NCBI GenBank assembly: GCA_002269645.1
Contig: NIVC01000061.1
Location: forward strand, 1-64,000
DNA length: 64,000 bases
Direction: 5' to 3'
DNA from: Macrostomum lignano
Taxonomy: Eukaryota
How positions within the stretch are numbered: the first letter of the stretch is position 1; each line of letters starts with the position of its first letter. Shown piece by piece: positions 7,191 through 64,000 of this stretch. Under the pieces are notes generated by a model that searched no databases, was not told the origin of the DNA, and was given only the letters and a program-made list of their open reading frames with translations. A program made the translations under genes and the position numbers.

Positions 7191-9092
<1,902 letters not shown>

Positions 9093-16504: not shown

Positions 16505-17807
<1,303 letters not shown>

Positions 17808-36240: not shown

Positions 36241-36797
36241 CGCTAGTCTCCTATCCTCTGTCTCATATCCTTCAGTCTCAAAAAGAATCCACTCTCATTT
36301 GCTGTCTCCTTTTGTCTTTTCTTCACTCTTCTTGGACCCGTCTCCCGCAGTTCCTCATCTTTACTGCCATCGTATCTCCTCTTGTCCCCCTGTTGTTTTG
36401 TCCGGACTCTAATCTCTAGTCTCGTTTCTTTTCATCTTCTTTCCCGTTAGTTTTGTCTCTTCTCATATGGATGCCTCTTCTCTTCTTGCTTACTGTAGAA
36501 CAACATATTAAAATAAATTTGGAATTCCAAAACTATATTAAGAATATTTGAGTAGACAGAATTATCATATATTTAAATTGATACACAATAAAACCAAATA
36601 CAAAAAGTAAGGTAGGATATGAAGCCTGAAGATGTTTTTCAAACCATTTTTTGATCGAAATTCTTTCCTAGCAGAGTGTAGGGTTCCTCATCCGTTCTCT
36701 CATTACGCTACTCCCCCTCTAGCGCACGAACCCAGCCAGTCAGTCTTGTTGACCTTGGCAACCCGCTCGTGTTGTGGTTGGTTACAATCTCCAAGCC

Positions 36798-43363: not shown

Positions 43364-45008
43364 TGCAAGTTAGGAATTGAATAATAGGAACACAGAAAAC
43401 TCTTTAAAAATTTGAAATCAACTATGAGTGAGAATAGTATTGTAACTTACGCGCTAAAGTCATAGTTCTCCATGAAAAGGGAATTTTTATTGAAAAGAAT
43501 GCATTGCAGGCTAGACAGTGGCGGAGCATTTAAAGATTTTTTTACAACCGAGTCTCAATAAATAGTTGATTCAGCCAATTAGTTGTGAAATTATAGGCTG
43601 TAAACAGCACAGGAGGCGTGTGCAACCATCGTTTGAACACAGCGAATGCTCCTGGGTGCTATTTTTAGATATGCTAGGCACACAGCTGAGTCACACTCAC
43701 TCTTGTTGACGGCGAAGCACGCAGGTGAAAGAATGCCAACTCCATTTCCTGAGATTCTCAGGATTCGCTTCTACTGATAAACTATCTTTATTATTGTGCC
43801 AGCAGCTCTGTAAGCATGCTTATTTCTCACTATAGCTGACTTCAGCAGTATATGCCGCAAAAACCTGCTGAGACAGAATCTGGCTTCAAGAAAGTTTAGA
43901 GCGAGTTAAATTGGAAACAACTGGGCATTTTGATCGTTGCCGATGGAAAACAACACGGGGGAAATTATTGACACAAAGAAATCGACACGAGGTGGTGTCA
44001 GTTTTCAGCTAGAAATTGATAGTTTCTGACAGCAAATTTCTTAGTGACAGAGTTCAACAGCTGACGTATTGCTGCGTTTCACCTTTTTCTACACTGTATT
44101 GAAAGCAGAAATATGGCCCAAAGCAGATTAAGAAATTGCTGTATTTTTAGACTATCGAGTCATGATAATCAATTTACCTGATTACCCTACCAGAGTTACT
44201 TAAGACTTTACACTTATCCAACAGATGCATAGCTAAAGTAAAAGCCGTACAAGAAAAGGGAGATTGTACTTCTATCCCGCTCAGCCTGCACCAAGTCAAA
44301 AAGTGAATTCACTCGCTGTTGGAGTCTAACTCTTTCTCGAAGGCACTCGTGGCAAAATTGAGCTGTACCCCATAGCCGTAGCCTTCCAAAATCTTTTAGA
44401 ACGACAAAAATAGAATTCAACTTTGTAGCCACTGAAACCTGATCTTCAGCCGAAAGCTTCCGTTTTTTTAACTGAGCAATCAGTTTCTGCAACTGTCGGA
44501 AAATTCTTTTGGGGAAAAACCGACCTTGATTTTTTGAGAAACTTTTTGTCTATTCTTTCAAATGAAGCCGGGCATTGAATGGCCGCGGCGAAAATCTCCG
44601 AGTTTAGCGTTTTTTTTTACAACTCTTCGGATCAAATGCCCTGCGAGTGTGCAGAACCTGGGCAACAAGCATATCGATTTGATCTTGGCTGACTCTGCAG
44701 AAGAGAAAGGCGCTGTGGGGGTGGGGCTCGAGTGACGCAGGACTTCGCAGCTGACACGGATCTGATTCCACAGCTCAGCAGATTTTGCTCCAAATAAATT
44801 CCCGGCCCCGCAGAGCGACTGCGATTTCTGTGGTCCCCTTCAGAACTTCTGCTTTCAAAACTGTTGTCTTCAAAACTTTCGTTCTCAAACTGCAGGGCTG
44901 GACGCATTGGTGAGTGGTGATTGTCTTTTCTAGCGATTCCACGACTAGCACACCTAGTTTACAGAATCTTAAGCGGAACTCAACCTCGGATTGCTTTCAG
45001 ATTACAAG

Positions 45009-48000
45009 ATGCGTCTCGCACTGCTACTCCTCAGTGCTCTTCTATTTGTGACTGTCTTCTGCGAGCTTGCCGATGCTCGTCAAGGCAAAAGGTGAGCTAA
45101 AAGCTAAGGTTGATTTTGTAGATATAACCTTTTCAAGGGATTTTAGCCTAGTGGTTTACAGCGTCGGACTCACGACTTATAGGTCGGGGGTTCGAGTCCT
45201 GAACTTTGTGTCCTTGAGCAAGAAACTTAACTCTGCATCGCTTCAGTTTACCCAGCTGTAAAATGGGTGCCAGCATTAGCTGGGGTAATTGAGGGTCTTT
45301 GGATTAAACAGCCATTACACAGCCTTCAGATGCGCCGCGCAATAGCTGAGGCTGTGCTGTCGGTTGCACATCTGGCCTAATTGGGGCAGGTGTAATCAAT
45401 TGTTATTATTATTACTACTATTAGTATTATTTTTATTTTATTATCGTAGAGAAAACAGCTATCATTGCAAAAATTGTTGCCTCGGTCGTCGCGTATCAGG
45501 CAGTCACAATTTCTCGAGTTCAAATTTATAAGGGGTCACCTTTTTTATTTTTTTGTAAAAAAAGTGAAATCGAGAAAAATCGGGAAATCGCTGCCTAAGT
45601 AGCCGTTAAAACCTCGGAGAGTGAACAAGCGAACCAAATGCGCATCGTCCCATCTTGCAGCAGAAGCATGCGCAGCTACTACAAGCGCATGCGCAGCAGC
45701 ATGGTTAAGCTGAAAGGCCTGTCCTACAGTCGGACTCGCAGGGCCGCAGCCATGCGCGGCCGCAAAGCCCGGGTCAGATGGGCCCGCCGCTTGAAGGCCC
45801 GGCGAGTGCGACGAGCGGCGATTCGATATCGCGTCACTCGCGTCAGCCGGCGGATACGCAGGACCAGCTCGGTGGTGCGGCGGTCTCGAGTGACTAGCAG
45901 AGCGCGGGTCAGACGGGTCGCTAGGCGATCCAGCTACTCGCGCTGCAAGCTGGCTGCCACTCGCTTCGTCTCCTGCACCAGGCGGCTGTACACTCGCTGC
46001 CCTGCTGGCTACAAGCGCAGAGGCAACATGTGCTTCCGGGTCTACTGTCCGAAGCCGTACGTCCGTCGGGGAGCAAAGTGCGTCCGTTACAGACGCGTTG
46101 TTGCTCGCCGGATGGCCTGCCCTCGCGGCTTCACCCGCTACGGCAGCCGATGCGTCCAGCGGCTTGGACTGACCTGCAGCGCCGGCTACCGTGTCTACAA
46201 GGGCCGCTGCCACCTGGTCCGCTGTCCTGCCGGGTTCACCAAAATTGGCAACAGCTGCCGCAAGAGCTGCCGGAAAGGCTTCACTCTGAAAGGCTTCACT
46301 TGCGTCCGAATCCGGACCAGATGCCCCAAGAACTACTACCGCGTTGGTGCTCGGTGTGTGCGCTATCGCAGCGGTCGGGCAAGGTAAGAATTTACTGAAT
46401 CCATCTGGTTGCCTCTCAAAGTAAAATTTCAGTTGTTTTTAACTCTCAATACCATTGTTGCAACATTTCAGATGTCGATCTGGTTATAAGAGAAAAGGCA
46501 GCAAGTGCATTCGCATATTAAAATCTTGCCCGCGCAACTACAAGCGGCGGGGTAGGCGTTGTGTCCTTACCTGTCCTAGTGGACGGATTCCAAGGCGAAC
46601 AAGAGACGGTCGCGTTCGTTGTGTCGTTGTGGTATCCAGGTGCCCTGTTGGCTACAAGATAAAACGGATCCGAACGCGTCGTGGCTATAGGTAAGTGACA
46701 TTGTTGGGACTTTGTCGCCTCAGAAAATCTGGAACAGAAATACATCACATCTGTCTATCTACACCTAATCTAGAATCCAGTGCACAATGAACAGCGGCAG
46801 CTGCGCTAAAGGTTTCCGCAAGATCAGACGCTATAAACGCGGCTACTCCTGCGTGAGGATCGCTTGTCCAAAGAACTACGTGAAGCGCGGTAGCGCCTGC
46901 GTTTATCGCTATAAAAAGCGTCGTCGATGCCCCAGCGGCTACACTCGGATGGGATCCACGTGTCGGAGGATCCGCTGCCCCGGAGGCTATGTAAGGCGCG
47001 GCAGTCGATGCGTTTTCGTTCGGTGTCCAAGTGGCTACAGGCGAGCTGGTCGCATGTGCGTCAGGACAAGATTCGTTAAAACCTGCCCATCTGGCTGGGT
47101 GCGACACGGCAAGCTTTGCAGGCGGTTGATTTGCCCCTCTGGCTACAAAAAGGTCGGCCAGTACTGCATTAGTAAGTAGCAAACTCGACAAGACATATCT
47201 AAGCGTTACTTCTAAACCAAAACAAAGGAACTAAAGTGACTTATCTCTTACTCCTCCAGACAACTCATGTCCCTCCGGTTTTGTGAGAAGGCGACGCATG
47301 TGCGTGCGAAGTAAGTTCCATTTAACAATTGTACAACTGCAAAACTTTAGGCAGCGGGAACTGCTGCAATAACAATTAGTCATTCAATTATTCACTTTCA
47401 GCTCACTGCACAACTGGATACAAGAAGAAAGGAAAGCTATGCGTTCGTAAGCGAAAAAATCTCAACTTCGAATCTCAGAACTATGAGATTTAAATTATTC
47501 AATGCAATTTGCTTTCTACGAGTATATTCCAAAATTTTCAGGGAATTGTCCGAAAGGCACAAAGAAATCTGGACGATTCTGTGTCAGAATGAGATGCCCA
47601 AAACGTTTTCGACGAGTAGGAAAAAGTTGCGTCCGAAGTAAGCACTCATTAAATAAATTCTCGAAAGTGCTGTGAAATGCAGAGAGCATCTTAAGATACC
47701 AGCTTATGCAAAATCTGACCTTCCAGCAAAATGTCCCAGTGGTTACGCTAAGCGATATGTCCGACAGAAAGTCTACACAGGGCGCACAGTCTCCGGATCA
47801 GTGAGAAAGTGCAGCTGCATCGGAGCCAAGACTGGCAAGAAACCGTCCAAAAAGAACGCCATCGACATGGCATTCGTGGTCGACGTGACCGGCAGCATGG
47901 GATCGGTGATCCGCGCGATCAAGGCCAAGATCCGCGAGGTTATCAATGCGAACGCTAAGTCGCGCATCGTAAGTGGTTTTCAATCTAAATTTCAGAGCCC

Positions 48001-51000
48001 TAAATAAAGAAGACCAATTTTCTAACGTGGCAAACGAAACGCTACCTGGCCATTTCAGGTAAACAAATTCGTGCTTGTACCGTACGGCGATCCGAAAGTT
48101 GGTCCAGTGACGGCGACTCGTGCGCGATCTCGCAGCTCCGTGAACTCTCTCATCAGAGCAGTGAACGCAATGCGCGCATCTGGCGGAGGCGACTGCGCCG
48201 AGTTCGGCTTCTCGGGAATATACGAAGCGCTGACCAGAGTAAAGAAGAACTCAATTGTGTACGTGTTCACCGATGCGAGTCCGTCAGCTCGAGACAGACG
48301 GTGAGCAGACATGGCATGTGTAGCATGCAGTCTTTTGCTGCAATACCAAGATATCAGCGGAGAAATATTACGAATCTATGATATGGTCCTTATTAATTTT
48401 CAATCAGTACCTAAAGAATAGTCACTTCCGAATATAGTTGAGCACGAAAAAGCAATTAATAATCAGTTTATGAGTGGAAATACCTCAGATTTCATCTGAC
48501 GGGGCCCATAGATTCCCACGCAGTAGAAATTAGCCAAGAGTGCGGCAATTCTATAATGCTTCTAAGCAATTTAGTTGGCCTTTGAACAGTAGTAAGGAAC
48601 CGGCAACTCCTTCTCTTTTGTACTGCCGTGGTTGAAAGCATGTTCTTTAATTGACGCCTCTGATGTCTGGGGGGCTTTCGTTTCCTGGAACCGGGGACCC
48701 TGAAGACCCTGAAGCCCAATCGAGAGGATCAACTGCAGATCAAGGACTACTAGACTAGGAAAAGGCAACACTTGCAAATCGTGGAAAAATAGTTGAAGGC
48801 CGAACATTAAAACTGTCTCTATCTCTGAATCGATTGCATGTAGAAACATCCTGTACAATGGAGACATCCTATATTTTGGTGCGATTGGTATTTAAGTATA
48901 AGTTTAGGAAGCAAAATAAAGTAGCCAAAAATCTTCGGCGTAACATTTGTTATTACGCTCATAGTTCACTTCTAAACATTACAGAATATACTTAGCCTTG
49001 GCATATACCCAATATGACAAAGCAATGTTGGGTTTCTTTCCTATAGTTTAAGAGTAGGCCTGGTTATGAAAATTACTTATAATTTGCAGACACAAATCGC
49101 AATCAGTAAAAAATCTACGAGTAAGTTGAGCAATAAAATAGGCCTAGGCCCATTAAAATAATCTCCTATAGTCGATAAAAATAATTACAAGTAATTTAAA
49201 AATTGTAAAGGTGTATTACGCTCGTAATGTATCTGCTGATAACGAGGGAGTGTCGCAATAAAAACTGAGCCGCGAGGGCGAGGAACACAAAAACGCGTAA
49301 AAAATTAATTTGCGGTAAAACCATCTTAATTAAACCTAAGATGCCTATCAGAAATTATATTTTATATGAGAATTCTTCTAGCTTAAAGCCCAACTCTCGC
49401 TTCTAAAAACAGTCCATTTATCTAGTTCGTATCGTGTGAAAGTGAGATCCAGTGAGCTCCAAGCACTGCAAGTTGCATCAACCTTTTTTAGCAACTTGAG
49501 CTAAAAAGTCGTTTCTAACCCACAGTCCGTCCCATTCGCTGAATGTAGAGATGTTCTGAATTTTGAAGCTCTTCATGGACAGCAGGGAGAAGTTTCTCGA
49601 GGTCATGAAGCGCGTCACAAACTCGTAATTTTTGGACAATTGCGGTCTGTTACTGAGTTTTTTCCGCCAGAACTCCATCTGCAGCGCCATGATGTTGAGC
49701 TCTCTAAACAGCTTCTCGCCATTCTTCATGAACAGGTGCTCACCGGACTCGATGTCCATCTTGATGACCACATTCTTGGTGCCGATGTGCGCTCGAAGCT
49801 CGTCCGCTTTGACAGTGGTCACAGGAATCGTGTCCTCGATTAACTTCGTGACCTGCCGTTTCCAGTCAGCCAATCCGCCTGAGCCGCTTCCAGCGTTGCA
49901 ATCCATGCCGTCAGCGTCCCAACTGATCCGCTTGAGCGCCACGTCGTCACTGATGAAGCCCCAGAAAAGCTTCAGCTTGTCGTCAAGCAAGTTCAGCCGC
50001 TTCGCTGACATTTGCAGCCTGACCAGTACGCGAATGTTAGCATCGATGGCCACCACGGGATACCCGAGCTCTCTGGCTTGCAGGCTGTAGATGCTAAGGT
50101 TGCTGCCGATATCGAGGAACGTCGCAGAGTTTGTCGGAAACTTCTTTAACAGGTCGAGCATCGTATGAATTGCGCTACTTTCCCATTTATTGTATCTTAG
50201 AATTAGTCCGGAAATCATGTCCTCCTTGCCGAAGGTGACTATCGGCATTAAAGGGCCGCCCATCGCTCGGGTCACATTGGCCAGAGGAGACCCTTGTCTG
50301 ACAATGGTGTACAACTGCTGCGGTAAGTTCCTGTTCAGCTCGCACAGGGGAAACTTGCCCCTGACTAACTGGTAGGCCGGCGTCTCCTGACATAGTCGGT
50401 GCTTCAGGCTGGGGTTCGTGAAGTCGACATTGCGGAGCTCGTTGAATGGAGGACAGTTTTTTTATCATTTTGACATCGCTCAGCGTTGGCAGCGACTCTT
50501 CGGCGGTCAGGCTTTTGCTTCCAATGAGATTTAGTTTTGAAGCGGTCAATATTTTGGACCGATAGGTATAGGACTCCGAAGCGGTGAATTTTTGTTTCCG
50601 GGAGACGAAATACGTGACAGTGATTAGCGCAATCGATGCGCATGCCACAAGAAATACGTGTGTTATTCGCATTCTGTCACTTAAATTTTTTTTTGCTTTA
50701 AATTTGTTTCGAATTTCTCTATCTGCTTACGGTGATGTAGACTGTTATACAGAATTGCATTCTTCAATGTATACAATAGAGTACTGCCTGTCTATCCGAA
50801 TGTAAAAGCTTTGCTCCGTGCAGATTCTTTGAGCTCCTGTCGGACAATGCAGCGCATAACTTACCAAAGTTGTTTCGAAGGTAGACAATTGATACCACAG
50901 GTGCACATAATGAGATGTGCACCTGTGGAGGGACAGACCAATGGGGCCTCTGCTGTAAACGCATCTGACTGTCCCACCCCACCCCCCTTTCGGTTCGATT

Positions 51001-54000
51001 TTGTGCGCCGCGGCATTATTAATTTGGGGTATGTGCTCAAAAATTTGGCAGGGGGGGGGGGTTGTCGTGCCACTCACACCTACTGGGGGCCAACCCTAAG
51101 GCACAGAGCTCGTCTGGGCTACTAGAAAGTTAGGGCACTTTGTGAGAGCGTGCCTGCATACAATAACCGCGCGCTTGAATCAGACTCAGCGCTAGGTTGC
51201 CCGAAACTCTCCTGCAACTATTACTTATTGTCATAGGAATAGGCCGGGTCCAAGCGCAGGGAAGCTCGCGCGTGACAGTGGGTAGATCATTCAGTATCGG
51301 GATAATTTAGAAAAAATCAGAAATGCATAGCTCGAACTTTGGAAGCTAGAACAGCGACAAAAAATTAAACAAAAAAATTAAACGTAAAAACATACTCTCG
51401 ACAACCTGTTTTAGTTTCCACCCCGAAACCAGAAATTAACAAGTGGCAGGTTTAATCCAACTCTAGCCGTAACTCTCTACTCTCTCATCACCAGCCTAAG
51501 CTAGGGCCTTATGACGCAGGCTGCCTTTTTACTCCCGAACAGAGAGTAGTTACACAGAACATAGTAGCATACTATGATAGAGGGCACATTTACAGTCTAA
51601 AAGAAGTTCGCATGTCTTTACGATGCTACACTTATCGCATTGAATAAGTAGTATGCACTGTATGTGCGACTGCGCGTGTATGATTCGATTAAATTTATAG
51701 TACTGCATTAAACTCCACTGTCAACCCCACAAACAAATCTGGTTAAAGCAAACTGGCCCCCAAACCGGGTGTTGAGCAAAAATAACGACCCCAGAACACA
51801 GGCGAAGGGGTTGGGGTAGCCAAAAGAGGGTGGAAGTGTGCGCAAACGCCGGATACGCAAACCACCCAGTAAAATTTCTTGACTGCAGAAAGGAGAGCAA
51901 TGTCCGATCGCTGGCTCGAAAAAAGAAAGCTCAGCTGAACTTCCTCATAACCGGAAATCTGTGCGGAAGACGCAACTCGTACCGCAGTTTGTCTCGATCG
52001 ACTCGAGGCGCTTGGATCAAGATGAGCAGAACTCGGGCTAGCCGAGTGATGAGCTTCGTGAGTCGCGCTCTGAAACACGGCGCCACTGCGTTGAGAGGCT
52101 TGAACCGTGACGGTCTGTCGACGTTCGTATCGAGGCGCGAGAAGTGTAAGTGTCGTAGAGTTCCTCGAATCACGCCCAAGTACGCATATGTGAACGCGGT
52201 GAGATGCATAAGAAAATCGTCAAAGAAATGCCGCCGAGGCTATCGACTGCTGAAAGGACGGTGTGTTCGTCGTGCAGTGTCTCGAAGGTGTCCTAAAGGC
52301 TATCGTATGCAGACAACTCGACAGAAGAAGCGCGCTGGTAAGAGAGCAGTCGGCGGCTTCGTGAAGAAGTGCCGCTGTCTCCACGGCAAGCCGCCAGCCA
52401 AGGTCACGAAGCGAGCTCTTGACATGGCGTTTGTTGTCGACGTGACTGGCAGCATGAGCCGCGTCATCAGCGGAATCAAGGCCAAGATCAGAGAGGTTAT
52501 CGATGCGAACTCACGCTTCGGAGTGGTAAGCATGCAGCTTCGATTGCATTTCTTATTTTTATCGATAGTAAAGACAATTACTTATATTTGTGTCCATTGA
52601 TATTTTAGGTGGACAAATTTGTGTTGGTCCCATTCGCTGATCCAGTGGTCGGTCCTCGAGTCGTGAGTCGAGCAAACAATGCGAGATCGAGACGGCGACT
52701 GCTGAGTGCAGTGAACCGATTGAGAGCATCTGGCGGTGGCGACTGTCCTGAGCTGAGTCGCTCAGGCATGTACCAGGCAGCGTCGGTGCTGAAGCCGGGC
52801 TCTATCATGTACGTGTTCACCGACGCCAGCTCATCGAGAAAGGACAAGGTGTAAGTATTTCGCTTAGGTGTTAGATGTTGTAAGATGTAGTAAGATGTGC
52901 AGCTTGTTAGCTTGCTGTACAAAAAGACACCGAGGCATTGGGGCGTCAGTGGAATTGCAGCTATGGAGGGGAAAATTAGTTACACACAATCTGCTGACCC
53001 GTGGGCACTGACCCGTACACAAATACGTACACGGGCACGAACTCACGTGGTGTGTCCAGCGTTACTCGTCTACTTACTCGTTAGGAATGTACACGTTCGG
53101 TTGGTTGTGGATAGGCCCTCTTGAAAACCAGCTAAAACAAGCATGTGTACTAATTTTGTAAAGGAGTTTTGAATTAATGTGAAATCACACTGAACTACAG
53201 TCGCGTTTACCACTGAACTACTCTGACCCCGCTTAGCTATTGCATGTAGGAGCGTAGTAATGTTAATTATCGTTTTAAATTCATCGCTTCTCCGTAAATT
53301 CATATTAAATGTAAGTTTTTCCTTTGGTTTGTTACTCAGGAGCCAAGCAGCTTTGCAGAAACTGATCAGCAGCAGAAAAATCCAGGTGAACTTCCTCATC
53401 TCTGGAAACCTCTGCGGACGTCGCAGTTCGTACAAGAACCTCGCAAAGAAAAGCAGCGGCTCGTGGACCGCAATGAACAAACGAATGTCCAACCGAGTTC
53501 TGTCGTTCATCAGCAGCGCTTTGGCTTTCGGAGCCAGACGCATGCGACAGCTGAACCGCAGCGGTCTGGCCAGATTCGTGAGACACCGCAAACGCTGCCG
53601 CTGTACCCGAACTCGGCGCACGGTGAACACCTACAAGTACGTGACGGTGCGCAGGTGCGTGAGGCGCAGTGCTGCCCGGACTGGCGGCAGCAGTTCGAGC
53701 GGCAGTCGAGGACGTCGAAGGTGCCCGCCAGGATTCCGGACAGTTCGGTCTGGTCGGCGCGGTAGTGTCAGATGCGTGCGCAGGAGCTCCAGTGAGTATC
53801 TACAGACGATTGTACTGAGTTTAAATGTACATGATTTTGTAAATTCTTGAGTCTGAAACCCAGTCAAATTATCTGCGAAAATCTTTCACAAGTAAGGCTC
53901 AAGCTTTCCTGTCTATGACTCCTATTAATCGAAACGCTGTATAAATGCAGGCACTAAATTTATTTTGTTGCAAATTTGTGGTAGTATTTGATAAAAATTA

Positions 54001-57000: not shown

Positions 57001-60000
57001 AGGATACAGACGCGTGAAGGGCAAGTGTGTGAGGCACTCGAGAAGGTGCCGTCGAGGATATAGACGCGTGAAGGGCAGGTGCGTGAGGCGCGGGGCTGCC
57101 CGGACTGGCGGCAGCAGTTCGAGCGGCAGTCGAGGACGTCGAAGGTGCCCGCCAGGATTCCAGACAGTTCGGTCTGGTCGGCGCCGTCGTGTCAGATGCG
57201 TGCGCAGGAGCTCCAGTGAGTATCTTTAGACATTTGTACCGTGTTTACATGTTCATCGTTTTGTAAAGTATTGAGTTTTTAATGGAATCAAGTAATTTGC
57301 CAAAAGTGTTTCCTAGTAAGACTTCAACCTTTCCTGTGACTCTCATAAATAGAAACTCCGTATCAATGTGGACCCACTTAATGCTCCGTAAAATTGGATT
57401 TTATAGAAAGAACGATTGATTAATTCCGTGAAAAGTTCGACTACTTCGTGTACAGAGATTTTTTGTAATTTCAATGACACAGACAATTTTTTCTAGCTGG
57501 TATTTTAGAAACAGTAAACGAAACTCATAATTTACTAATTTACGAGCGTACTGACGGCAACTTTATTAGTTACTTTATGGTTCGTTTGGTCGAACCATAG
57601 GGTCTCTGAAAAACTCCGCCAATCAAAGCGACAGTCATCTCACAACAATTGAAGGCAGATGGTAGGGCTTCAGTATGCCTCACAATACACAAAACTTAAA
57701 CTGTAAACTTTTGTACGCTCGTATTTCGTGAGAGTTGTTGAAATTGTCCTGCATTTTTGGTAAACGATGTCTCAAGGTGTAAAAATTTGGGTTGGGACTT
57801 TCCTTGGCTCCACTACTCGAAAGTCGGCTTTGGGACTCTCTGTTGTGCGCTCGCAGTTGCTGATTTTTGTAAAGCCAGCTTATTTGACTAGTGAAATACT
57901 TAGTGAGCCGAAAATCAATTCTCAATCTTGCAATGAAAGATCTGCAAGTCTGTAACAGTAATTAACATAAATAGCTGATATAATTTATTGCCAAACATCT
58001 GAAAATGAGACGCAAGCCAGCACGAAGCCCCTCGAAATATAAATTGTAAAGTTAATACGCTCGAACGATGTGGCATAAAATAACACATTTAAGTAAGATT
58101 CACAAGCAAGTTGACACAGCTAAGAGGAAGAAACAATCTATTGCGCAAACCACTCGCACAGGGCCAGGCCCGTACCTACACACAACCACACATGCAACAA
58201 GTACCATAGCGCGCAACACCACCCCAAACATCTACTCATACAAACTCCGGTTAGCCACTAGCGATGCTCGTCAAGCCGGTAGATTACTGCGCCAACGCCT
58301 AAAACCAGAGATATCCCTGAGCATTATCTTCTTTTCTTTTGAGAAGGGGAAGAATAAAGGTGTTTGCTCGTACAGTCTGGATAAGAGCCAATTTTTTACT
58401 TCAAATTAAATTCTTTCAAAACATCAACTTCAGGGTCAATAATTACTTATTATGGCCATATTTGCCGGTTCATTGGATTGTAATCGTTGCTTTACGAGTG
58501 TATAACCACTGAATTATTGAGCACGTTTATTTAAACTAGCTTGTATTACAACTTTTACTATTTTAGAACGTTGTGGAAAATACTTCCGACGATATGGCAG
58601 AAAGTGCATCAGAGGTGAGAAATGATTGACTGCTAAATAGCTCGAGATAAATTTATTTAAATATGTGCGTATGCACCGAGTAAAATTGAAACTGCTTTGT
58701 GCAATCGGTTGCAGTTCGCTGCCCGCGCAGCATGAAGTCAAGGCGCATTCGCTCGAGAGTCCGAGTCGGCAAGCGTGTGGCTGGCTACACTAAGAAGTGC
58801 AGCTGCATCGGAGCCAAGACTGGCAAGAAACCGTCCAAAAAGAACGCCATCGACATGGCATTCGTGGTCGACGTGACCGGCAGCATGGGATCGGTGATCC
58901 GCGCGATCAAGGCCAAGATCCGCGAGGTTATCAATGCGAACGCTAAGTCGCGCATCGTAAGTGGTTTTCAATCTAAATTTCAGAGCCCTAAATAAAGAAG
59001 ACCAATTTTCTAACATGGCAAACGAAACGCTACCTGGCCATTTCAGGTAAACAAATTCGTGCTTGTACCGTACGGCGATCCGAAAGTTGGTCCAGTGACG
59101 GCGACTCGTGCGAGATCTCGCAGCTCCGTGAACTCCCTCATCAGAGCAGTGAACGCAATGCGCGCATCTGGCGGAGGCGACTGCGCCGAGTTCGGCTTCT
59201 CGGGAATATACGAAGCGCTGACCAGAGTAAAGAAGAACTCAATTGTGTACGTGTTCACCGATGCGAGTCCGTCAGCTCGAGACAGACGGTGAGCAGACAT
59301 GGCATGTATTGATTAAGTTAATTTTGCTTTTTTGCTACCAATACCAAGATATCAGCTGAAAAAATATTATAACTCAATTTTCATGACTGCAGAAAGGAGA
59401 GCAACGTCCGATCGCTGGCTCGACGCAAGAACGCTCAGCTGAACTTCCTCATAACCGGAAATCTGTGCGGAAGACGCAACTCGTACCGCGGTTTGTCACG
59501 ATCGACTCGAGGCGCTTGGATCAAGATGGGCAGAACTCGGGCTAGCCGAGTGATGAGCTTCGTGAGTCGCGCTCTGAAACACGGCGCCAGTACGCTGAGA
59601 GGCTTGAACCGTGACGGTCTGTCGACGTTCGTATCGAGGCGCGAGAAGTGCAGGTGTCGCAGAGTTCCTCGATTTACAGCAAAGTACTCGTATGTAAATT
59701 CCGTAAAGTGCGTTAAGCGTTCTACATCCAAATGTCGTCGAGGATACAGACGCGTGAAGGGCAGGTGCGTGAGGTACTCGAGAAGGTGCCGTCGAGGATA
59801 TAAACGTATCGGCGGCAAATGCAAGAAAGCAGTTAGCGTTGGAGGTGAGTTTAATGGATGCTGTTTTGAGTCACTTGAGTCCCTTTTATAGCGCAAAGCA
59901 AGGTTTAAAAGCTACTCCACCTTGATTATAGTATCCTGTGGAACTTTCCGGTGCACTCGAGGCATGAGTTGTCTGAAGAAATACCGATACGATGCCCGCG

Positions 60001-63000
60001 TTAGATCTTCTGCACGAGCAGCTTACAGCGCTCGATTGGTTCGCGCCACCCGCTGGTTCAACTCTAGACGAGCAGCCGAAGCTCGACGTCACAAACTATT
60101 TTTAAGAAACATGAAACCTCGCCTATCAGGTGAGCCAAACAGGATTTATGATTTTCGTAAAAATGCGATAAAAAGTCATCAGAAAAATTGCTTTCAGCCA
60201 AACGAGTGAGCCGCTTCTGCGAGCATAAAACTGGCACCGTCAGCTGCCCGCGAGGTACCACGATCGACATTGTTTCCGGATTATACGGCCGCGTATCCAA
60301 TAAGTACTGCACTCGGGGACCCAGACGCACCACCTCTTGTTCAGCTCGTACAGCCAGTTCGCGTATAAGAAGCTCTTGTCAGAACAGGCAGTCGTGCCGA
60401 CTTTCAGCTAGCAATAGCGTCTTTGGCGACCCTTGCGTTGGTACGCTGAAGTACGTGGAGATTCGCTACAGATGCAAGGCGACGCGAGCCACGACCGGTG
60501 CACGAAAGGCCGAGAAAGCAAGATACGCCGCCGCTTTGAAGAAACTTTCAAGAAGTTACAACATGATGAAGGCGAAACTAAACGCCTCCTTAAAACGCTT
60601 GCAATCCAGGGTCAGCCGGTGTGCATTTGTAGCCCCGAAAAAAAGTAAGTAACTTTTTATCCATCACTTCTTTCATTCTTCTTTCATCACATGTTCAGGA
60701 GAGTCTTTTCGTTTATTACGCAATTCAGCTGGCTGCAAGGCGGTCAGGTGCGGCAGAGGCAAGAAGTGCGTGATGAGAAGACGGCGCTTTGCTGGTCGAA
60801 TGGCCTACAAACCGGCCTGCGTTAGGGTGCCGCCGAGTGGTAAGATTTGCACGTTTCTGTAAAATAAGCTGCCGTTCTTCAAGCCAAATAGAAAGTGCAC
60901 ACTTCAACCAAAATTGCAGCTCTGTGTGCCAGAATCAGATGCGGTCGCGGGCGTCGCTGCGTGATTCGGACGACAAGGCGTCGAATTGGGCGTCGAGTGC
61001 GAGTTTTCAAGTCGGCTAAATGTCAGCCCAGGAAAAGTAAGCTTCGAGGCGAATTTGGACAACAAAATCTATTTTTTATAGAGTGAAACAATTACTTTTG
61101 AGCAAAGATTTCACGAATGACCGATGTGCTAATCCCTGTATTGGTTACTGAGTCTAAGTCAGTCTACTCTAAATTGTCCTTTTCGGCAGGTCTCTACACG
61201 GTGGAATTAATGAAAGGACTCAACTTTAGGATTTAACATCCACAAATCAGATCTTTCCATGTATATATATATATATATATACGCCCTCCAAATCAAGACT
61301 ACTTGGCGCTTTGAATGCGATATAAATACTTCTAAAATATTTCTAAAACCTTCCTAATCACAAGACGTTCAACAATTTACCTTTCCAAAGCAGGAATATC
61401 AGTAATATTTAAATACTCTTTGAATTTCATCTTCTGAAATATTTCTTAAAAAGTTGAAATTGCTGAGACAGATATGTGCCTTTAAATCAAGGTCTGTTAC
61501 GTTAAGTATCCATTATAAATAGGTTCTTGAAATCGCTTGAAATGTTAGTTAGTAAGCATCGTATTGTAAAACCGTTCTTTTTTATCCTACTGTGAGAATG
61601 AGTCGCCGTCATGGCGATATTTCGGATTTTCAAGTCAGATCGTCCAGAATTTTCAGTAAGAAATAGACTCACCGTAAAAACATTCGACACCCTTTCTTGT
61701 GACTTTTCCAACAGACCTGTGCAGCACCATGAAGTGCCGCTCGGGCTCGCGGTGCCGAGTTGTCTATCAAACCAAGACTGTGCGTCGCCGGGTGCGCAGG
61801 CGTCAGAAGCGATGCTCCTGTAATCGGGCAGTCAAATCGAAGGCGGCGAAATCCGCAGCAAGAGGCTCCGCTGTTGACATGGCGTTCGTGATTGATACGA
61901 CCGGAAGCATGGGCCGAGTGATTCGCAGCATTCAGAGCAACATAATTAAGATTGTGAAGGCTAACAGAGGCACAGTCAGTCGGTTTGTTGTCGCTCCATT
62001 TAATGATCCTAAGGTAAGACGCTGGAGTTTTGAAAGTAATTCAGTGACAAAATATCTGAAAAGACTCAGCTCTCTCAAAATCTATTTAAAGTTTACTAAG
62101 TTTGAGCTTTGATGGCAAATTTAATGCCAGTTTTAAGGAGCCTCGAGCCCATTCCACTGACCCTTGACTACGCACACGGATACGCAGCCAAGTACACTCT
62201 CACAGGGTGGCCAGTGGCCCTTACTTTCACATCGTCAGGTAGTGTAAAGAATCTGTGAATTGCAGAGCTTGGTCCTCATGGGGGAAAATTCCCAGACAAA
62301 GGGCCTGTCAACTTAAGCTCACAAAGTGGAGCCCGAGTAACCTATGTGCACAAATTATGCGTCGTTCTGCTCACAGTGACACTAGGAAGCTATATTTGGC
62401 AAAAATGCGACAAAAATTGGACTTGGGATAGGGAAGAATAACCAAGGGGATGATTAGTGACTTATATTAACTTAAGCTTATAAAGTCCCTAATTATGTCC
62501 TTGCTTGTTCTCCCCGAACCCAAGTCAAATTTTTGTCGCATTTTTGCCAAACCCAGCTTCCTGGTGTCACTGTGAGCAGAACAACGCATCATTTTTGTGG
62601 TTACCCGGGCTCCACTTTATGAGCTTAAGTTGACAGGCTGTTTTTGTGCTCAAATCCTAAACTAATTTGGCTGCGCCTGGACGGCTTCTCTGCCCCTTCT
62701 AAGTCGCTAGGGAATGTGGTGAAAAATGATTGTTAAGTGATTCTCGGTTTTAGAGTTCTGCTTCTTTAAAATTGACGACCTCCTTTCTTACGAGATATGT
62801 TTTCCAAGCAGCGCCACACAAGTTAAAGCCTGGATATAATGTTTTAAGCCCATCTTAGATGTGCTTTCATGATTCACTATTTTTGCTTATCATTTAGGTC
62901 GGGCCGCTGACAGTCAGCACGAAGGCGGGATCAATAGTATCAGCAGTGAGACGCCTGAGGGCTCGAGGCGGCGGCGACTGTCCAGAGTTAGCGATGCGCG

Positions 63001-64000
63001 GCATTCTGGCCGCAGCCAGAAAGGTTAAGCGCGGCTCCGTGATCTACGTGTTTACCGACGCCAGCGCTAAAGATTACAGGTTGCAGAAAAAGGTAAAATG
63101 ATTTTGCAATGGTGCATGTCTTTAGGAAAACTATATACGCAAATCTGACAATAAATATTTTTTTTCAACTACACATGTAGGTACGCAGAGTCATCGACAA
63201 CAAGAACCTGCAGATGGTGTTTATTGTCACGGGAAGACTTTGCGGAAGAAATTACCACAAAGAGTACCAGGCTCTTTCCAGAGGCAATGGCCGTGTCATC
63301 ACTTTGAACAGCCGAAAAGTCAACAAGGTGCTGAGCTTCATCCGTCGAGCCGTCGCCCTGGGCAGCTCCCGTCTTAGACGCTTGAATCTGTCTGATCTTG
63401 GAAGCTACATCCGGAAGTGTAAGTGCAGAAGTGTGACACGTGTTATCACGAGGACCTACAAGAAATACCGACGGGTGGCCAGGTGCACAAAGAGGGCTCC
63501 TGGTGACTGCAAATCTCGCAAGTGCAGCAAGGGCTTCAAGTGTGTTGCAATCAAGACTCGATCGATACCGAGCAGAACAGTGACGCGCTGCGTCCGGTCC
63601 AGCAGTAAGTTTATTTCTGTCATTATGAAGGCAGATTTTTTGTTTAGTAAAGTAAATAGTGTATAAAAAGTAGCACATTTGTTTTTTTTACATAATTACC
63701 CGATTAATTAATTTTGTAATAATTTTGAGAGATGAGCAATTTTAAGTAACTGTACTGAGAGGACTATTCTACTTCTATGCTGCCACTATGATATCTTATT
63801 GACTTCTTTCACGAGTAAAAGGTTACTTTAATCAATTAATAAATGAGCTACTTTTTAATTTACAGACCTTTGCAACAACATCAAATGCCGCAAGGGCTAC
63901 GCGTGCAAGGTGCGCAAGTTTGGTCGCATGTACACCAGACGAGGACGCCGATACAGACTTGTCCGATTCAAGGCCCGTTGCGTTCGTGTCAAAACTGGTG
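45009..64000 (+). CDS. Giant secreted Arg/Lys/Cys-rich protein with five hemicentin-type VWA domains, CxxG[YF]xxxGxxC repeats, a SUEL lectin domain and follistatin-N-like repeats; 3' end beyond the window
   Basis: Signal peptide MRLALLLLSALLFVTVFCELADA. Exons: 45009-45091, ~45560/45638-46383 (5' end unresolved), 46472-46690, 46774-47171, 47260-47310, 47402-47446, 47542-47637, 47727-47968, 48059-48300, 51889-52525, 52609-52850, 53340-53791, 55004-55245, 55336-55577, 55682-57215 (1-nt deletion near 56840), 58715-58956, 59047-59288, 59393-59844, 59932-60129, 60198-60644, 60729-60839, 60920-61036, 61715-62013, 62898-63092, 63181-63604, 63866-beyond 64000. Phases match at every junction from exon 2 onward; over 8.3 kb coding. 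Confidence 0.88.
45145..45440 (+). mobile_element. tRNA-derived CORE-type SINE in intron 1 of the giant gene
   Basis: A-box-like TAGTGGTTTACAGCG, B-box GTTCGAGTCC (45190-45199), CORE-like GTGTCCTTGAGCAAGAAACTTAAC...CTTCAGTTTACCCAGCTGTAAAATGGG, (TTA)n tail; second partial copy at 24116. Confidence 0.85.
47858..52130 (+). other. VWA domain 1 of the giant protein (exons 8-10, split by the 3.6-kb intron holding the methyltransferase)
   Basis: DMAFVVDVTGSM ... FVLVPYGDPKVGPV ... SGGGDCAEFGFSG ... VYVFTDAS ... LNFLITG: the motif series of the hemicentin/VWA7-type VWA domain. Confidence 0.88.
49478..50672 (-). CDS. Intronless FkbM-family (Methyltransf_21-like) SAM-dependent methyltransferase with N-terminal type II membrane anchor; one frameshift in the T7 run at 50457-50463
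   Basis: N-terminal MRITHVFLVACASIALITVTYFVSRK. After the homopolymer, the other frame continues KNCPPFNELRNVDF... into ORF 49478-50314 with FLDIGSNLSIYS, VVAIDAN, IKMDIESGE, QMEF. Removing one base gives a 397-aa ORF. Confidence 0.85.
52415..53580 (+). other. VWA domain 2 of the giant protein (exons 10-12)
   Basis: LDMAFVVDVTGSM ... FVLVPFADPVVGP ... SGGGDCPELSRSG ... MYVFTDAS ... VNFLISG. Confidence 0.88.
55135..55920 (+). other. VWA domain 3 of the giant protein (exons 13-15), near-identical to VWA1
   Basis: Same motifs, near-identical DNA including the 90-bp intron. Confidence 0.88.
56026..57085 (+). repeat. Coding 54-bp tandem repeat, about 19-20 copies, encoding RRCRRGYRRVKGRCVRYS
   Basis: Unit CGTCGAGGATACAGACGCGTGAAGGGCAGGTGCGTGAGGTACTCGAGAAGGTGC within exon 15; one unit lacks an A near 56840. 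Confidence 0.95.
58846..59640 (+). other. VWA domain 4 of the giant protein (exons 16-18), near-identical to VWA1 and VWA3
   Basis: Same motifs and intron positions; near-identical DNA. Confidence 0.88.
60212..60475 (+). other. SUEL/rhamnose-binding (Gal_lectin) domain of the giant protein
   Basis: CEHKTGTVSCPRGTTIDIVSGLYGR...C...C...CQNRQSC.L.ASNSVFGDPCVGTLKYVEIRYRC: eight Cys plus the YGR, DPC and KY motifs of the family. Confidence 0.92.
61870..63410 (+). other. VWA domain 5 of the giant protein (exons 23-25), most similar to canonical hemicentin VWA
   Basis: DMAFVIDTTGSM ... FVVAPFNDPKVGPL ... RGGGDCPELAMRG ... IYVFTDASAKDYRL ... MVFIVTG ... KVNKVLSFIRRAV. Confidence 0.9.
62303..62638. 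mobile_element. ~336-bp imperfect palindrome (foldback/MITE-like) in intron 23 of the giant gene
   Basis: GCCTGTCAACTTAAGCTCACAAAGTGGAGCCCGAGTAACC (62303) is complemented by GGTTACCCGGGCTCCACTTTATGAGCTTAAGTTGACAGGC (ending 62638); complementarity continues inward (CTGCTCACAGTGACAC/GTGTCACTGTGAGCAG, TGCGACAAAAATT/AATTTTTGTCGCA) to a centre near 62470. Confidence 0.8.

What the first reader, a model, noticed from the sequence alone, without database searches (positions are those of the whole stretch)
45009..64000. Giant polycationic, Cys-rich secreted protein with five hemicentin-type VWA domains: candidate undescribed adhesive, cement or wall protein
Seen: signal peptide, over 2,700 aa, five VWA domains with DxTGS MIDAS-like motifs, each flanked by CxC motifs. 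Linkers are dominated by Arg/Lys with almost no acidic residues, and even the VWA surfaces are Arg-rich. Known: hemicentin carries one such VWA at its N-terminus followed by Ig repeats; short CPxG...C repeats build coccidian oocyst wall proteins (COWP); the Macrostomum glue protein Mlig-ap1 is Lys/Arg-rich with VWA, C-type lectin and EGF domains. Inference: this architecture matches neither, so it may be a distinct material-forming secretion (glue, rhabdite/mucus, or egg capsule) that assembles by electrostatic complexation with polyanions and disulfide cross-linking.
Basis: partly seen in the sequence, partly recalled or inferred. Interest (0 to 1): 0.88.

Follow-up and report, generated by a model that had tools for sequence, protein, structure and literature searches.

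The report
Giant polycationic five-VWA flatworm secreted protein
This is a real but uncharacterised gene of the flatworm Macrostomum lignano that encodes a secreted protein of about 3,300 residues with roughly +970 net charge, built from cysteine hairpins, five charge-inverted von Willebrand A domains and a sugar-binding lectin, and it is most likely a building block of a secreted sticky material rather than any described glue protein.

Summary
The window is the first 64 kb of Macrostomum lignano contig NIVC01000061.1. It runs about 2 kb past the window, giving about 3,298 aa, pI 11.9 and net charge about +974. The VWA domains themselves have pI 11.4-11.7, against 4.0-5.3 in hemicentin and VWA7.

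GenBank annotates it as two hypothetical genes. The split falls at a single-base deletion in one of about 20 copies of a 54-nt repeat, so I read it as one gene.

It is not Mlig-ap1, hemicentin or VWA7. It belongs to a family of basic tandem-VWA_4 proteins whose named members are all from M. lignano. A 62%-identical paralogue (3,863 aa, pI 12.1) appears, undiscussed, in published footprint mass-spectrometry tables. No peptide of this gene was found there, and no expression site is known.

Best reading: a secreted polycationic, multivalent cross-linker of an extracellular material. This is a new variant of a known kind, of moderate interest. The function is inferred, not shown.

The parts
44810..44908 (+). 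5' untranslated exon of the transcript-based GenBank model
   Evidence: Residues 1-33 of P0002, which read through the UTR, map here at 100%.
45009..45091 (+). Exon 1: start codon and signal peptide MRLALLLLSALLFVTVFCELADA
   Evidence: Direct reading shows a GTGAGC donor. The same N-terminus is present in P0002-P0004.
45661..47637 (+). Six exons (45661-46383, 46472-46690, 46774-47171, 47260-47310, ~47404-47448, 47542-47637). They encode a Cys-free Arg-rich stretch of about 95 aa and then about 24 hairpins of the type CPxG[YF]xRxGxxC.
   Evidence: Splice model and exact mapping of P0002. No Pfam family reaches its cut-off. CpCOWP1 matches at E 2e-30.
47727..48300 (+). VWA1, exons A (47727-47968, CSC and DVTGSM) and B (48059-48300, GGGDC and VFTDA)
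   Evidence: Pfam VWA_4 E 1.6e-36; unit limits.
51889..52525 (+). A single exon holding the last third of VWA1, a hairpin linker and the first third of VWA2. It ties the units into one reading frame.
   Evidence: ORF 51776-52597. The acceptor is homologous to those of units 3 and 4. P0002 residues 737-949 map exactly.
52609..53791 (+). VWA2, exons B (52609-52850) and C plus linker (~53340-53791)
54856..55577 (+). Small hairpin exon (54856-54903) and VWA3 exons A (55004-55245) and B (55336-55577)
   Evidence: 54840-56089 is 98.6% identical to 58551-59800, introns included.
55682..57215 (+). Exon with the end of VWA3, the 18-aa hairpin array and a Gly/Ser/Arg linker
56022..57088 (+). Tandem array, period 54 nt, 19.7 copies, 95% matches. 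Each copy encodes CRRGYRRVKGRCVRYSRR.
   Evidence: Tandem Repeats Finder; repeat families; copies listed in register.
56839..56840 (+). One-base deletion (CGAGGA to CGGGA) in one repeat copy. It shifts the frame and coincides with the split of the GenBank annotation into two genes.
   Evidence: Start-to-start spacing is 53 here instead of 54. The frame-2 ORF stops at 56852 and the frame-1 ORF carries on. The second annotated gene starts at 56945.
58567..59844 (+). Small hairpin exon (58567-58614) and VWA4 exons A (58715-58956), B (59047-59288) and C plus hairpins (59393-59844)
59932..60130 (+). Exon with a CxxxxCxxGxxC knot and a basic segment. The 3' end of this exon is uncertain: my model stops at 60087, while the allele P0001 implies about 13 more codons.
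60198..60644 (+). SUEL-type (D-galactoside/L-rhamnose) lectin domain with eight Cys and the YGR, DPC and KYV motifs, followed by a basic helix-like segment
   Evidence: Pfam PF02140 E 2.5e-19, 69.9 bits against a 31.4-bit cut-off. The motifs were read from the translation.
60729..61036 (+). Two small exons (60729-60839, 60920-61036), each with a CxxxxCxxGxxC...C knot
   Evidence: present in P0001.
61715..63604 (+). VWA5, exons A (61715-62013), B (62898-63092) and C (63181-63604). This is the most divergent unit.
   Evidence: Pfam VWA_4 E 1.4e-38.
63866..64000 (+). Next Cys-knot exon. The gene leaves the window here and continues on the contig to a stop at about 65.9-66.0 kb, adding about 520 aa of basic helices and Cys knots.
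   Evidence: L002 extension and tblastn of P0001.

Best explanation
One gene of Macrostomum lignano encodes a secreted polycationic modular protein of about 3,300 aa and about 383 kDa. GenBank splits it into BOX15_Mlig001212g3 and the model that follows it.

Shown:
- Gene structure, signal peptide and domain content.
- Extreme charge, including charge-inverted VWA_4 domains that still keep every family-invariant residue.
- Conservation under purifying selection against an old paralogue.
- Membership of a family of basic tandem-VWA_4 proteins whose named members are all from M. lignano.
- Presence of the closest paralogue in surface-deposited footprint material.

Inferred mechanism: after secretion from a gland or epidermal cell, the protein acts as a multivalent cross-linker of an extracellular material such as an adhesive footprint, mucus or rhabdite-type secretion. 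The proposed contributions are:
- About +970 charges bind polyanionic partners such as sulfated or acidic glycans, glycocalyx and anionic surfaces.
- The SUEL lectin docks on galactose- or rhamnose-type glycans.
- The five VWA domains offer MIDAS-like, metal-dependent protein contacts.
- About 54 disulfide-closed 12-residue beta-hairpins act as protease-resistant, stiff spacers like those of oocyst wall proteins.
- The paired CxC motifs probably staple the N- and C-termini of each VWA domain.
For: Identity and structure of the gene:
- Searches give the gene model and its extension beyond the window.
- P0002 maps exactly onto the exons.
- One exon spans the end of VWA1 and the start of VWA2.

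One gene rather than two:
- The annotation split sits at a 1-nt deletion in one of about 20 repeat copies, and the frame stays open afterwards for more than 1,400 codons across about a dozen introns.
- The paralogue's complete transcript (11,590 nt, 3,863 aa) carries both VWA and galactose-lectin annotation in one ORF.

Domains:
- Pfam VWA_4 and SUEL lectin.
- AlphaFold2 model of VWA1: pLDDT 84.6, pTM 0.85.
- Foldseek finds VWA folds, including mussel byssus PTMP1, integrin I domains and vWF A1.
- The invariant D..T.GSM, DP, GGGD..E and FTDA residues are kept.

Charge.

Selection: pN 0.26-0.31 with saturated pS 0.71-0.83 against paralogue P0006, rough dN/dS 0.14 in the VWA, and the same exon pattern in both genes.

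Family: named basic VWA_4 proteins (pI above 10) come only from M. lignano, alongside unnamed fragments.

Secretion:
- Four peptides (NSIVYVFTDASPSR, NIVNVINVNAK, VGPVTISR, FILVPFADPK) are exact matches to P0006.
- The matching entry appears in both footprints_Trypsin_intact sheets of Wunderer et al. 2019 (PMC6410801), and these peptides are absent from the held part of the tail-tissue sheets.
- Other family members (P0047, P0051) occur in the footprint, tail and PNA pull-down tables.

Precedent: Mlig-ap1 is a giant Lys/Arg-rich cohesive protein whose function is blocked by heparin.
Against: - No peptide of this protein itself was found in the held (truncated) MS tables.
- No expression site is known, and no paper names the gene.
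- The footprint samples are not clean. Their top entry is a vitellogenin-like lipoprotein, and ribosomal proteins and tubulin are present. Presence there therefore does not prove a role in adhesion.
- The frameshift is in the assembly as it stands. If it is real in this haplotype, the protein would stop after VWA3 and the array.
- The protein has 64-74 RX[K/R]R motifs, so it may be cut into pieces in the secretory pathway.
- Metal binding, glycan binding and the disulfide pattern are untested.
- The hairpin model is of low confidence: pLDDT 60, pTM 0.21.
Confidence: 0.55

Rival explanations
1. The protein is an egg-capsule, shell-gland or cement-gland wall protein. It would be built into a hardened protective layer, as COWP hairpin proteins are in coccidian oocyst walls, rather than into glue or mucus.
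For: - The hairpin region is the part most like CpCOWP1.
- It has high Cys content and 4.6% Tyr.
- The footprint samples contain a vitellogenin-like protein as their top entry, so egg-derived material may be present in them.
Against: - The one published shell/cement-gland transcript I could compare by sequence (RNA815_13) is a different gene.
- Nothing links this gene to the ovary or tail region.
- COWPs are not basic and carry no VWA or lectin domains.
Confidence: 0.15
2. The protein is a polyprotein precursor. Furin-type convertases would cut at the many RX[K/R]R sites and release about 20 identical 18-aa Arg-rich disulfide hairpins plus other hairpins. These would act as cationic antimicrobial peptides in mucus, comparable to bactenecin-, arenicin- or tachyplesin-like beta-hairpins (comparison from my own knowledge). 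The VWA and lectin modules would anchor them.
For: - About 20 copies of CRRGYRRVKGRCVRYSRR at 95-97% nucleotide identity, each ending in a dibasic site.
- 64-74 RX[K/R]R motifs in the protein.
- Each unit is predicted as a two-strand hairpin.
Against: - With 32% Arg+Lys, about 46 such motifs are expected by chance (my estimate), so the sites are not evidence of processing.
- The hairpins elsewhere in the protein are diverse and contiguous, like structural repeats.
- The paralogue was identified through peptides spread over several domains of one 3,863-aa entry.
- No mature peptide is known.
Confidence: 0.08
3. The protein is a reproductive secretion, either seminal fluid from the prostate or a sperm- or antrum-binding protein. 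In that role the polycation, the lectin and the VWA domains would bind partner tissue or sperm.
For: - Family members are abundant in amputated-tail proteomes, and tails contain the prostate and antrum.
- The family is an expansion whose named members are all from M. lignano, a pattern also seen in fast-evolving reproductive genes.
Against: - The BLAST table of the prostate in situ screen holds no hemicentin, von Willebrand or lectin hit.
- The paralogue is found in footprints on glass.
- Nothing ties this gene to the tail.
Confidence: 0.07
4. The locus is not one intact gene. Either the frameshift is real, giving a truncated protein of about 1,800 aa plus an untranslated or separately expressed 3' half, or the near-identical VWA units 1, 3 and 4 and the array are partly assembly artefacts.
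For: - A 1-nt deletion is present in the assembly.
- GenBank has two models.
- Units 1, 3 and 4 are 99-100% identical at the DNA level, introns included. This is where long-read assemblies of a polyploid genome can collapse or duplicate sequence.
- UniProt models P0003 and P0004 join the exons differently.
Against: - The downstream frame stays open for more than 1,400 codons with canonical introns.
- A 96-98%-identical second copy (P0001) encodes the same 3' half.
- The paralogue is a single 3,863-aa ORF.
- Single-base indels are the usual residual error of PacBio assemblies (my own knowledge).
Confidence: 0.1

Closest known systems
Hemicentin-1 and VWA7 N-terminal VWA domain (Pfam VWA_4, PF25106)
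   Same: The VWA domains belong to this family. The two units scanned (VWA1, VWA5) score 126-133 bits. The DxTGSM, VPFxDP, GGGDCPE, VFTDA and LTGxC motifs and the VWA fold are all present.
   Different: - There are five tandem copies instead of one.
- There are no Ig, TSP1, G2F or EGF modules as in hemicentin, and none of the flanking domains PF23560, PF25107 or PF23619 of VWA7.
- The charge is inverted: pI 11.4-11.7 against 4.0-5.3.
- Each domain is bracketed by CxC.
Mlig-ap1, the cohesive glue protein of the same species (Wunderer et al. 2019, PMC6410801)
   Same: Both are giant secreted Lys/Arg-rich proteins that carry a lectin domain and Cys-rich modules. For Mlig-ap1, function by charge is supported by heparin inhibition.
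   Different: - Mlig-ap1 has 5,407 aa, with KR regions made of SRKPRRKNRKSRKP-type repeats, a C-type lectin, vWD-C8-TIL and 17 calcium-binding EGF modules.
- None of its repeat peptides occurs in this protein or anywhere in the window.
- This protein instead has VWA_4, a SUEL lectin and hairpin repeats, and it is Arg-dominated.
Paralogue Mlig000911g8, the 3,863-aa pI 12.13 entry in the footprint MS tables of PMC6410801
   Same: It is 61-62% identical over hairpins and VWA, has the same exon pattern, and carries the same combination of SUEL lectin and hemicentin-type VWA in one ORF.
   Different: It is a different locus and a longer protein. It was detected in footprints, whereas this gene's peptides were not found in the held tables. 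It is not discussed in the paper.
Cryptosporidium oocyst wall protein COWP1, type I repeats
   Same: Both have tandem CPxG[YF]...G..C hairpin units. Sequence matches are significant: E 3e-37 over 8 stretches, and 2e-30 pairwise.
   Different: COWP1 is not basic. It also has type II and His-rich repeats and no VWA or lectin domain, and it is apicomplexan. Identity is only about 26% and is carried mostly by Cys, Pro and Gly. Convergence of a simple motif cannot be excluded.
Sea star footprint protein Sfp1 and mussel byssus PTMP1
   Same: Sfp1 is a Cys-rich cohesive footprint protein with galactose-binding lectin domains (PMC6410801 discussion). PTMP1 is a tandem-VWA matrix protein of an extracorporeal material and is among the structural matches.
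   Different: There is no sequence relationship beyond the domain class. Neither is described as polycationic in the sources I read, and neither has VWA_4-type domains or hairpin arrays.

Membership tests
VWA_4 (hemicentin/VWA7-type VWA domain, PF25106) | Match to the Pfam model above the gathering score | tested here: met
   The two units scanned, VWA1 and VWA5, score 125.9 and 132.6 bits against a cut-off of 27. VWA2-4 share the same motifs, and VWA2 aligns with them.
VWA_4 (hemicentin/VWA7-type VWA domain, PF25106) | Family-invariant residues (D, G-S-M of DxTGSM; D-P; G-G-D..E; F-T-D-A) | tested here: met
   These residues are invariant in alignment A1 of three of the window's units with hemicentin and VWA7 segments.
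VWA_4 (hemicentin/VWA7-type VWA domain, PF25106) | Alpha/beta VWA fold | tested here: met
   AlphaFold2 model with pLDDT 84.6 and pTM 0.85. Foldseek gives 326 PDB matches at E<=0.001; the 50 listed are all chains or complexes that contain a VWA domain, with TM 0.5-0.63.
VWA_4 (hemicentin/VWA7-type VWA domain, PF25106) | Metal ion bound at the MIDAS-like site | not testable with these tools
   The candidate ligand residues are present, but binding needs biochemistry or a solved structure.
Hemicentin orthologue | One N-terminal VWA followed by a long Ig array, TSP1, G2F and EGF/fibulin modules | tested here: not met
   Pfam finds only VWA-type and SUEL lectin domains and there are five VWA units. 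The array stretch (model residues about 1410-1860) was not scanned, but it consists of the 18-aa hairpin repeat. True hemicentins hit only at E 1e-24 and over the VWA alone.
VWA7 orthologue | VWA_4 flanked by PF23560 on the N-terminal side and PF25107/PF23619 on the C-terminal side | tested here: not met
   These families are listed for the VWA7 hits but were not found in this protein.
Mlig-ap1 | KR regions of SRKPRRKNRKSRKP, KNNKRRVRKARKNN and KSRKVN repeats | tested here: not met
   Zero occurrences in the protein model and in all six frames of the window.
Mlig-ap1 | C-type lectin, vWD-C8-TIL and 17 calcium-binding EGF modules; 5,407 aa | tested here: not met
   None of these domains appears in the Pfam scans. 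The description of Mlig-ap1 is taken from PMC6410801.
SUEL-type lectin domain (PF02140) | Pfam match above the gathering score, with eight conserved Cys and the YGR, DPC and KY[LV] motifs | tested here: met
   69.9 bits against a cut-off of 31.4. The Cys count and motifs were read from the translation of 60198-60644. Which motifs are diagnostic comes from my own knowledge.
SUEL-type lectin domain (PF02140) | Binding of galactose or rhamnose | not testable with these tools
   This needs a glycan array or haemagglutination inhibition assay.
COWP (coccidian oocyst wall proteins) | Tandem type I Cys repeats | tested here: inconclusive
   Matches to CpCOWP1 are significant, but identity is 24-26%, is carried by Cys, Pro and Gly, and there are many gaps.
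COWP (coccidian oocyst wall proteins) | Type II and His-rich repeats, and location in the oocyst wall | tested here: not met
   His is only 0.4% of the protein, no such segment is seen, and the organism is a flatworm.
Basic tandem-VWA_4 family of Macrostomum | Two or more VWA_4 units with pI above 10 in a secreted protein | tested here: met
   This protein has five units of pI 11.4-11.7. Relatives P0006, P0040, P0044, P0047, P0051 and P0198-P0201 are described.

The most novel reading that the evidence does not exclude
The basic tandem-VWA_4 proteins, so far named only from M. lignano, would be a so far unrecognised third component of the flatworm's temporary adhesive or of its mucus and rhabdite secretion. 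This gene and its footprint-detected 3,863-aa paralogue are their largest known members. They would be charge-inverted VWA modules on a disulfide-hairpin backbone that condense with polyanions in a coacervate-like way. Through the SUEL lectin they would dock on the Gal-beta(1-3)-GalNAc glycans reported for Mlig-ap2. This would link adhesive, cohesive and glycocalyx layers and provide further targets for the proposed anionic releasing factor.
Probability: 0.15. Interest if true: 0.75.

Novelty: new variant of a known kind. Interest (0 to 1): 0.5.

Why it matters
Macrostomum lignano is the best-understood model of reversible underwater adhesion, and its current model rests on two proteins. The published proteomic tables already contain several very basic hemicentin-type VWA proteins that nobody has discussed, and this locus is one of the two largest members of that family.

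If these proteins are part of the glue, mucus or egg coat, three things follow:
- They add multivalent, charge-driven and lectin-driven cross-linkers to the model.
- They give a natural example of a whole globular domain family recoded from acidic to strongly basic while keeping its metal-site residues.
- They offer compact design elements for biomimetic materials: 12-residue disulfide hairpins and cationic VWA modules.

On the practical side, the work shows that the GenBank annotation splits the gene at a probable single-base assembly error.

Tried and rejected
- Mlig-ap1 and Mlig-ap2 identity: rejected. The paper's description differs, and their repeat peptides are absent from the window.
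- RNA815_13, the shell/cement-gland transcript of Arbore et al. 2015: its sequence is a different gene.
- Searching the footprint, tail and pull-down tables of PMC6410801 for 12 tryptic peptides of this protein: no peptide of this protein was found; hits to two truncated queries (NSIVYVFTDASPS, GSVIYVFTDASAK) belong to the paralogue's peptides. The files are truncated as held.
- Gene IDs Mlig001212 and Mlig000911 in full texts and in the supplements of PMC6410801 and PMC5816591: no hits.
- Blast table of the prostate in situ screen (PMC5977470): no hemicentin, VWA or lectin entries.
- Positional RNA-seq table for family members RNA815_1151 and RNA815_2254: not in the held part of the file.
- Lengerer et al. 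2018, the tail in situ screen: not held.
- Pfam on the hairpin region and the C-terminal tail: nothing above threshold. Only weak EGF_MSP1, Lustrin_cystein and cEGF hints appeared.
- AlphaFold2 on ten hairpins: the local hairpins are consistent, but confidence is low (pLDDT 60), so I did not use the model for a fold search.
- ARAGORN on the SINE-like stretch in intron 1: no tRNA.
- Literature on rhabdites and single-cell atlases of Macrostomum: nothing usable.
- My first splice model contained a false 44-nt intron (56819-56862) bridging the frameshift, a too-long VWA1 C exon (51802 instead of 51889), and it missed the exon at about 47404-47448. All three were corrected using P0002.

Full report
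WHAT IS THERE

The window is eukaryotic. A homology search with the 3' third of the predicted protein returned Macrostomum lignano proteins at 97-100% identity. The contig look-up showed that window coordinates equal the coordinates of GenBank contig NIVC01000061.1, assembly GCA_002269645.1. I verified this base for base for 34810-64000.

On the plus strand, from 45009, stop-free segments with an extreme Arg/Lys/Cys composition follow each other with GT-AG junctions. A simple dynamic-programming splice model gave 28 exons and 2,777 aa running off the window end.

GenBank protein BOX15_Mlig001212g3 ('hypothetical protein, partial', P0002) maps residue for residue onto exons 45009..56399. That mapping corrected three details of my model. 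The contig beyond the window carries the rest of the gene to a stop near 65.9-66.0 kb. The total is about 3,298 aa and 383 kDa. The last few dozen residues are uncertain, because the allele P0001 ends differently.

CHECK OF THE OBSERVATION

- Exon 1 encodes MRLALLLLSALLFVTVFCELADA, a textbook signal peptide by inspection.
- Five units of 214-222 aa run from a CxC through DxTGSM to a second CxC.
- The two units scanned against Pfam (VWA1, VWA5) match VWA_4, the hemicentin/VWA7-type VWA, at E 1e-36 to 1e-38. VWA2-4 are assigned by motif and alignment.
- The units keep every residue that is invariant in an alignment with hemicentin and VWA7 domains.
- An AlphaFold2 model of unit 1 is confident (pLDDT 84.6, pTM 0.85) and is a VWA fold by Foldseek.
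- In that model both termini, which carry the CxC motifs, are short beta strands. This is compatible with a double disulfide staple, but confidence there is only about 60 and I could not inspect coordinates.
- The protein has 22.6% Arg, 9.3% Lys, 5.7% Cys and 2.4% Asp+Glu, with pI 11.9 and net charge about +974.
- The VWA units have pI 11.4-11.7, whereas ten hemicentin/VWA7 VWA_4 domains have pI 4.0-5.3. The globular domains themselves have been recoded to basic.

- A complete SUEL-type galactose/rhamnose lectin domain at 60198-60644.
- A 54-nt tandem array encoding about 20 copies of CRRGYRRVKGRCVRYSRR.
- The C-terminal 520 aa outside the window, made of long basic helix-like segments separated by CxxxxCxxGxxC knots.
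- The recent internal duplications. Units 1, 3 and 4 are 99-100% identical in DNA, introns included, and 54840-56089 is 98.6% identical to 58551-59800.

ONE GENE OR SEVERAL

GenBank has two models: 44810-56399 (1,596 aa, partial) and 56945-65901 (1,542 aa). The boundary lies inside the 54-nt array. There, one copy reads CGGGA instead of CGAGGA, a single missing A at 56839/56840. This gives a start-to-start spacing of 53 instead of 54 and a stop at 56853.

Four points favour one gene:

- After the deletion the other frame stays open through four more repeats and then for more than 1,400 codons across about a dozen canonical introns.
- The exon 51889-52525 contains the end of VWA1, a linker and the start of VWA2 in one ORF, so the units are joined.
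- A second, 96-98% identical copy in the database (P0001) encodes the same 3' half.
- The paralogue's complete transcript encodes 3,863 aa with both VWA and lectin.

I therefore treat the split as the consequence of a probable assembly indel. A real haplotype-specific frameshift cannot be excluded. My estimate for 'not one intact gene' is 0.1.

RELATIVES

An exhaustive HMMER search of 1.84 billion representatives with residues about 100-1190 found 1,740 hits. The strongly basic ones with VWA_4 units are these:

- M. lignano proteins: P0006 (Mlig000911g8, 61%), P0040 (which also has an LCCL domain), P0044, P0047 and P0051.
- Unnamed read-assembly fragments.

A profile of basic units gave the same picture. 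All named hits above 180 bits are M. lignano and have pI 10.9-11.8. From the next hit downward the proteins are hemicentin/VWA7-like and almost all acidic to neutral (pI 4.3-7.6; one, P0205, is 9.2). This looks like a lineage-specific, charge-inverted expansion, although flatworm coverage in the databases is thin.

Against P0006 the nonsynonymous difference is 0.26-0.31, while synonymous sites are saturated at 0.71-0.83. The exon pattern is the same in both genes. The duplication is therefore old and both copies are constrained.

The hairpin region has no Pfam family. It does match Cryptosporidium COWP1 type I repeats (E 3e-37 in the exhaustive search, 2e-30 pairwise at about 26% identity). 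It also matches a Lys-rich hairpin protein of unknown origin (P0039). A low-confidence AlphaFold2 model (pLDDT 60) shows one two-strand hairpin per repeat and no fixed packing between repeats.

WHAT IS KNOWN ABOUT IT

No held paper mentions the gene.

It is not Mlig-ap1. That protein has 5,407 aa, with KR regions of SRKPRRKNRKSRKP-type repeats, a C-type lectin, vWD-C8-TIL and 17 EGF modules (PMC6410801). None of its repeat peptides occurs in the window.

The supplementary mass-spectrometry tables of that paper contain an undiscussed entry in both 'footprints_Trypsin_intact' sheets. It is annotated as a complete CDS on an 11,590-nt transcript, with a galactose-binding lectin domain, a hemicentin hit, 3,863 aa, 457 kDa and pI 12.13. 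Four of its peptides are exact matches to paralogue P0006 and not to this protein. Those peptides are absent from the held part of the tail-tissue sheets. Peptides of P0047 and P0051 occur in the footprint, tail and PNA pull-down tables.

Twelve tryptic peptides of this gene's product were not found; two truncated queries hit only the paralogue's peptides. The stored files are truncated. The footprint samples also contain vitellogenin-like, ribosomal and cytoskeletal proteins, so presence there shows deposition, not function.

HOW IT MOST LIKELY WORKS

Shown: a secreted, constrained, giant polycation with five VWA_4 domains, one SUEL lectin and about 54 Cys-x(9-12)-Cys loops, of which 43 span exactly 12 residues.

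Inferred: it is a multivalent cross-linker of a secreted extracellular material.

- The charge would bind acidic or sulfated glycans and anionic surfaces. The precedent is Mlig-ap1, whose deposition is abolished by heparin.
- The lectin would bind Gal- or Rha-type glycans. Mlig-ap2 carries Gal-beta(1-3)-GalNAc, which makes a direct link conceivable but untested.
- The VWA domains would make metal-dependent protein contacts, as in other matrix VWA proteins such as byssal PTMP1.
- The hairpins would serve as disulfide-locked spacers.

I put 0.55 on this general reading. Within it, the type of secretion (glue, mucus or rhabdite) is open.

The rivals are:

- An egg-capsule or cement wall protein (0.15).
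- A broken or mis-assembled locus (0.10).
- A convertase-processed polyprotein releasing cationic hairpin peptides (0.08). The 64-74 RX[K/R]R motifs are close to what the composition alone predicts.
- A reproductive secretion (0.07).

NOVELTY AND VERDICT

The gene is annotated only as hypothetical. Its family appears only in supplementary tables. Its architecture is not that of any described protein I could find. It combines signal peptide, Arg-rich stretch, COWP-like hairpins, five basic VWA_4 domains with hairpin linkers, a SUEL lectin, and basic helices with Cys knots.

The ingredients, however, are those of known marine adhesive and matrix proteins, and a polycationic giant glue protein is already known in this species. 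I rate it a new variant of a known kind, with interest 0.5.

Its interpretation is partly supported, and its score was too high.

Noticed in passing
window 49478-50672, minus strand: An unannotated nested gene lies inside the 3.6-kb intron between VWA1 exons B and C. The ORF 50672..50187 starts with a membrane-anchor-like segment. The ORF 50314..49478 (278 aa) has a weak FkbM-type methyltransferase match (PF05050, E 0.0015, below the cut-off). It is absent from the GenBank gene list for this stretch.
   Followed up: partly
window 45093-45660 (intron 1), about 45130-45290: A tRNA-like or SINE-like stretch with a GGTTCGAGTCC-type box B is followed by an A/T-rich simple repeat. ARAGORN calls no tRNA here.
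   Followed up: partly
window 5244-6850 (-) and 10804-12479 (+): There is an inverted pair of genes encoding CUB-LDLa-LDLa-trypsin-like serine proteases. The 231-aa protease ORFs are identical in protein, while the CUB/LDLa exons have diverged.
   Followed up: no
window 7192-9093, 16505-17808, 22186-23325, 34942-36280, 39781-40693: Very long simple repeats are present: (GACA)n of 1.9 kb, (GTA)n of 1.3 kb, and 14-, 15- and 16-nt arrays of about 1 kb each. They explain the strong skews in base composition.
   Followed up: no
L006 (ENA ERZ24794637 NODE_34325), 891-6431: P0039 is an intronless 1,846-aa protein with 27% Lys+Arg and 9% Cys, made of about 39 CPKGYKKxGxxC hairpins and with no VWA domain. 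It sits on a 7.9-kb metagenome contig with tightly packed ORFs. This is a polycationic hairpin-repeat protein outside flatworms, and its organism is unknown.
   Followed up: partly
P0040 (UniProt A0A1I8JEL7) and P0038 (A0A1I8I2M0), M. lignano: Other family members vary the theme. P0040 has basic VWA_4 units plus an LCCL domain. P0038 has three VWA_4 units, is not basic, and ends in a His-rich tail.
   Followed up: partly
contig NIVC01000061.1 from 66112 (L002 31303-31590): Another large annotated gene (1,671-aa product) starts only about 200 bp after this gene ends. I did not check whether it is a further family member.
   Followed up: no
L002, record 65840-66060: The 3' end reads differently in this locus and in the allele P0001. 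Here it is a roughly 55-aa RRxRR-type poly-Arg tail up to a stop at about 66036. In P0001 it is '...RRARRVNEQGE*'. The true C-terminus is unresolved.
   Followed up: partly
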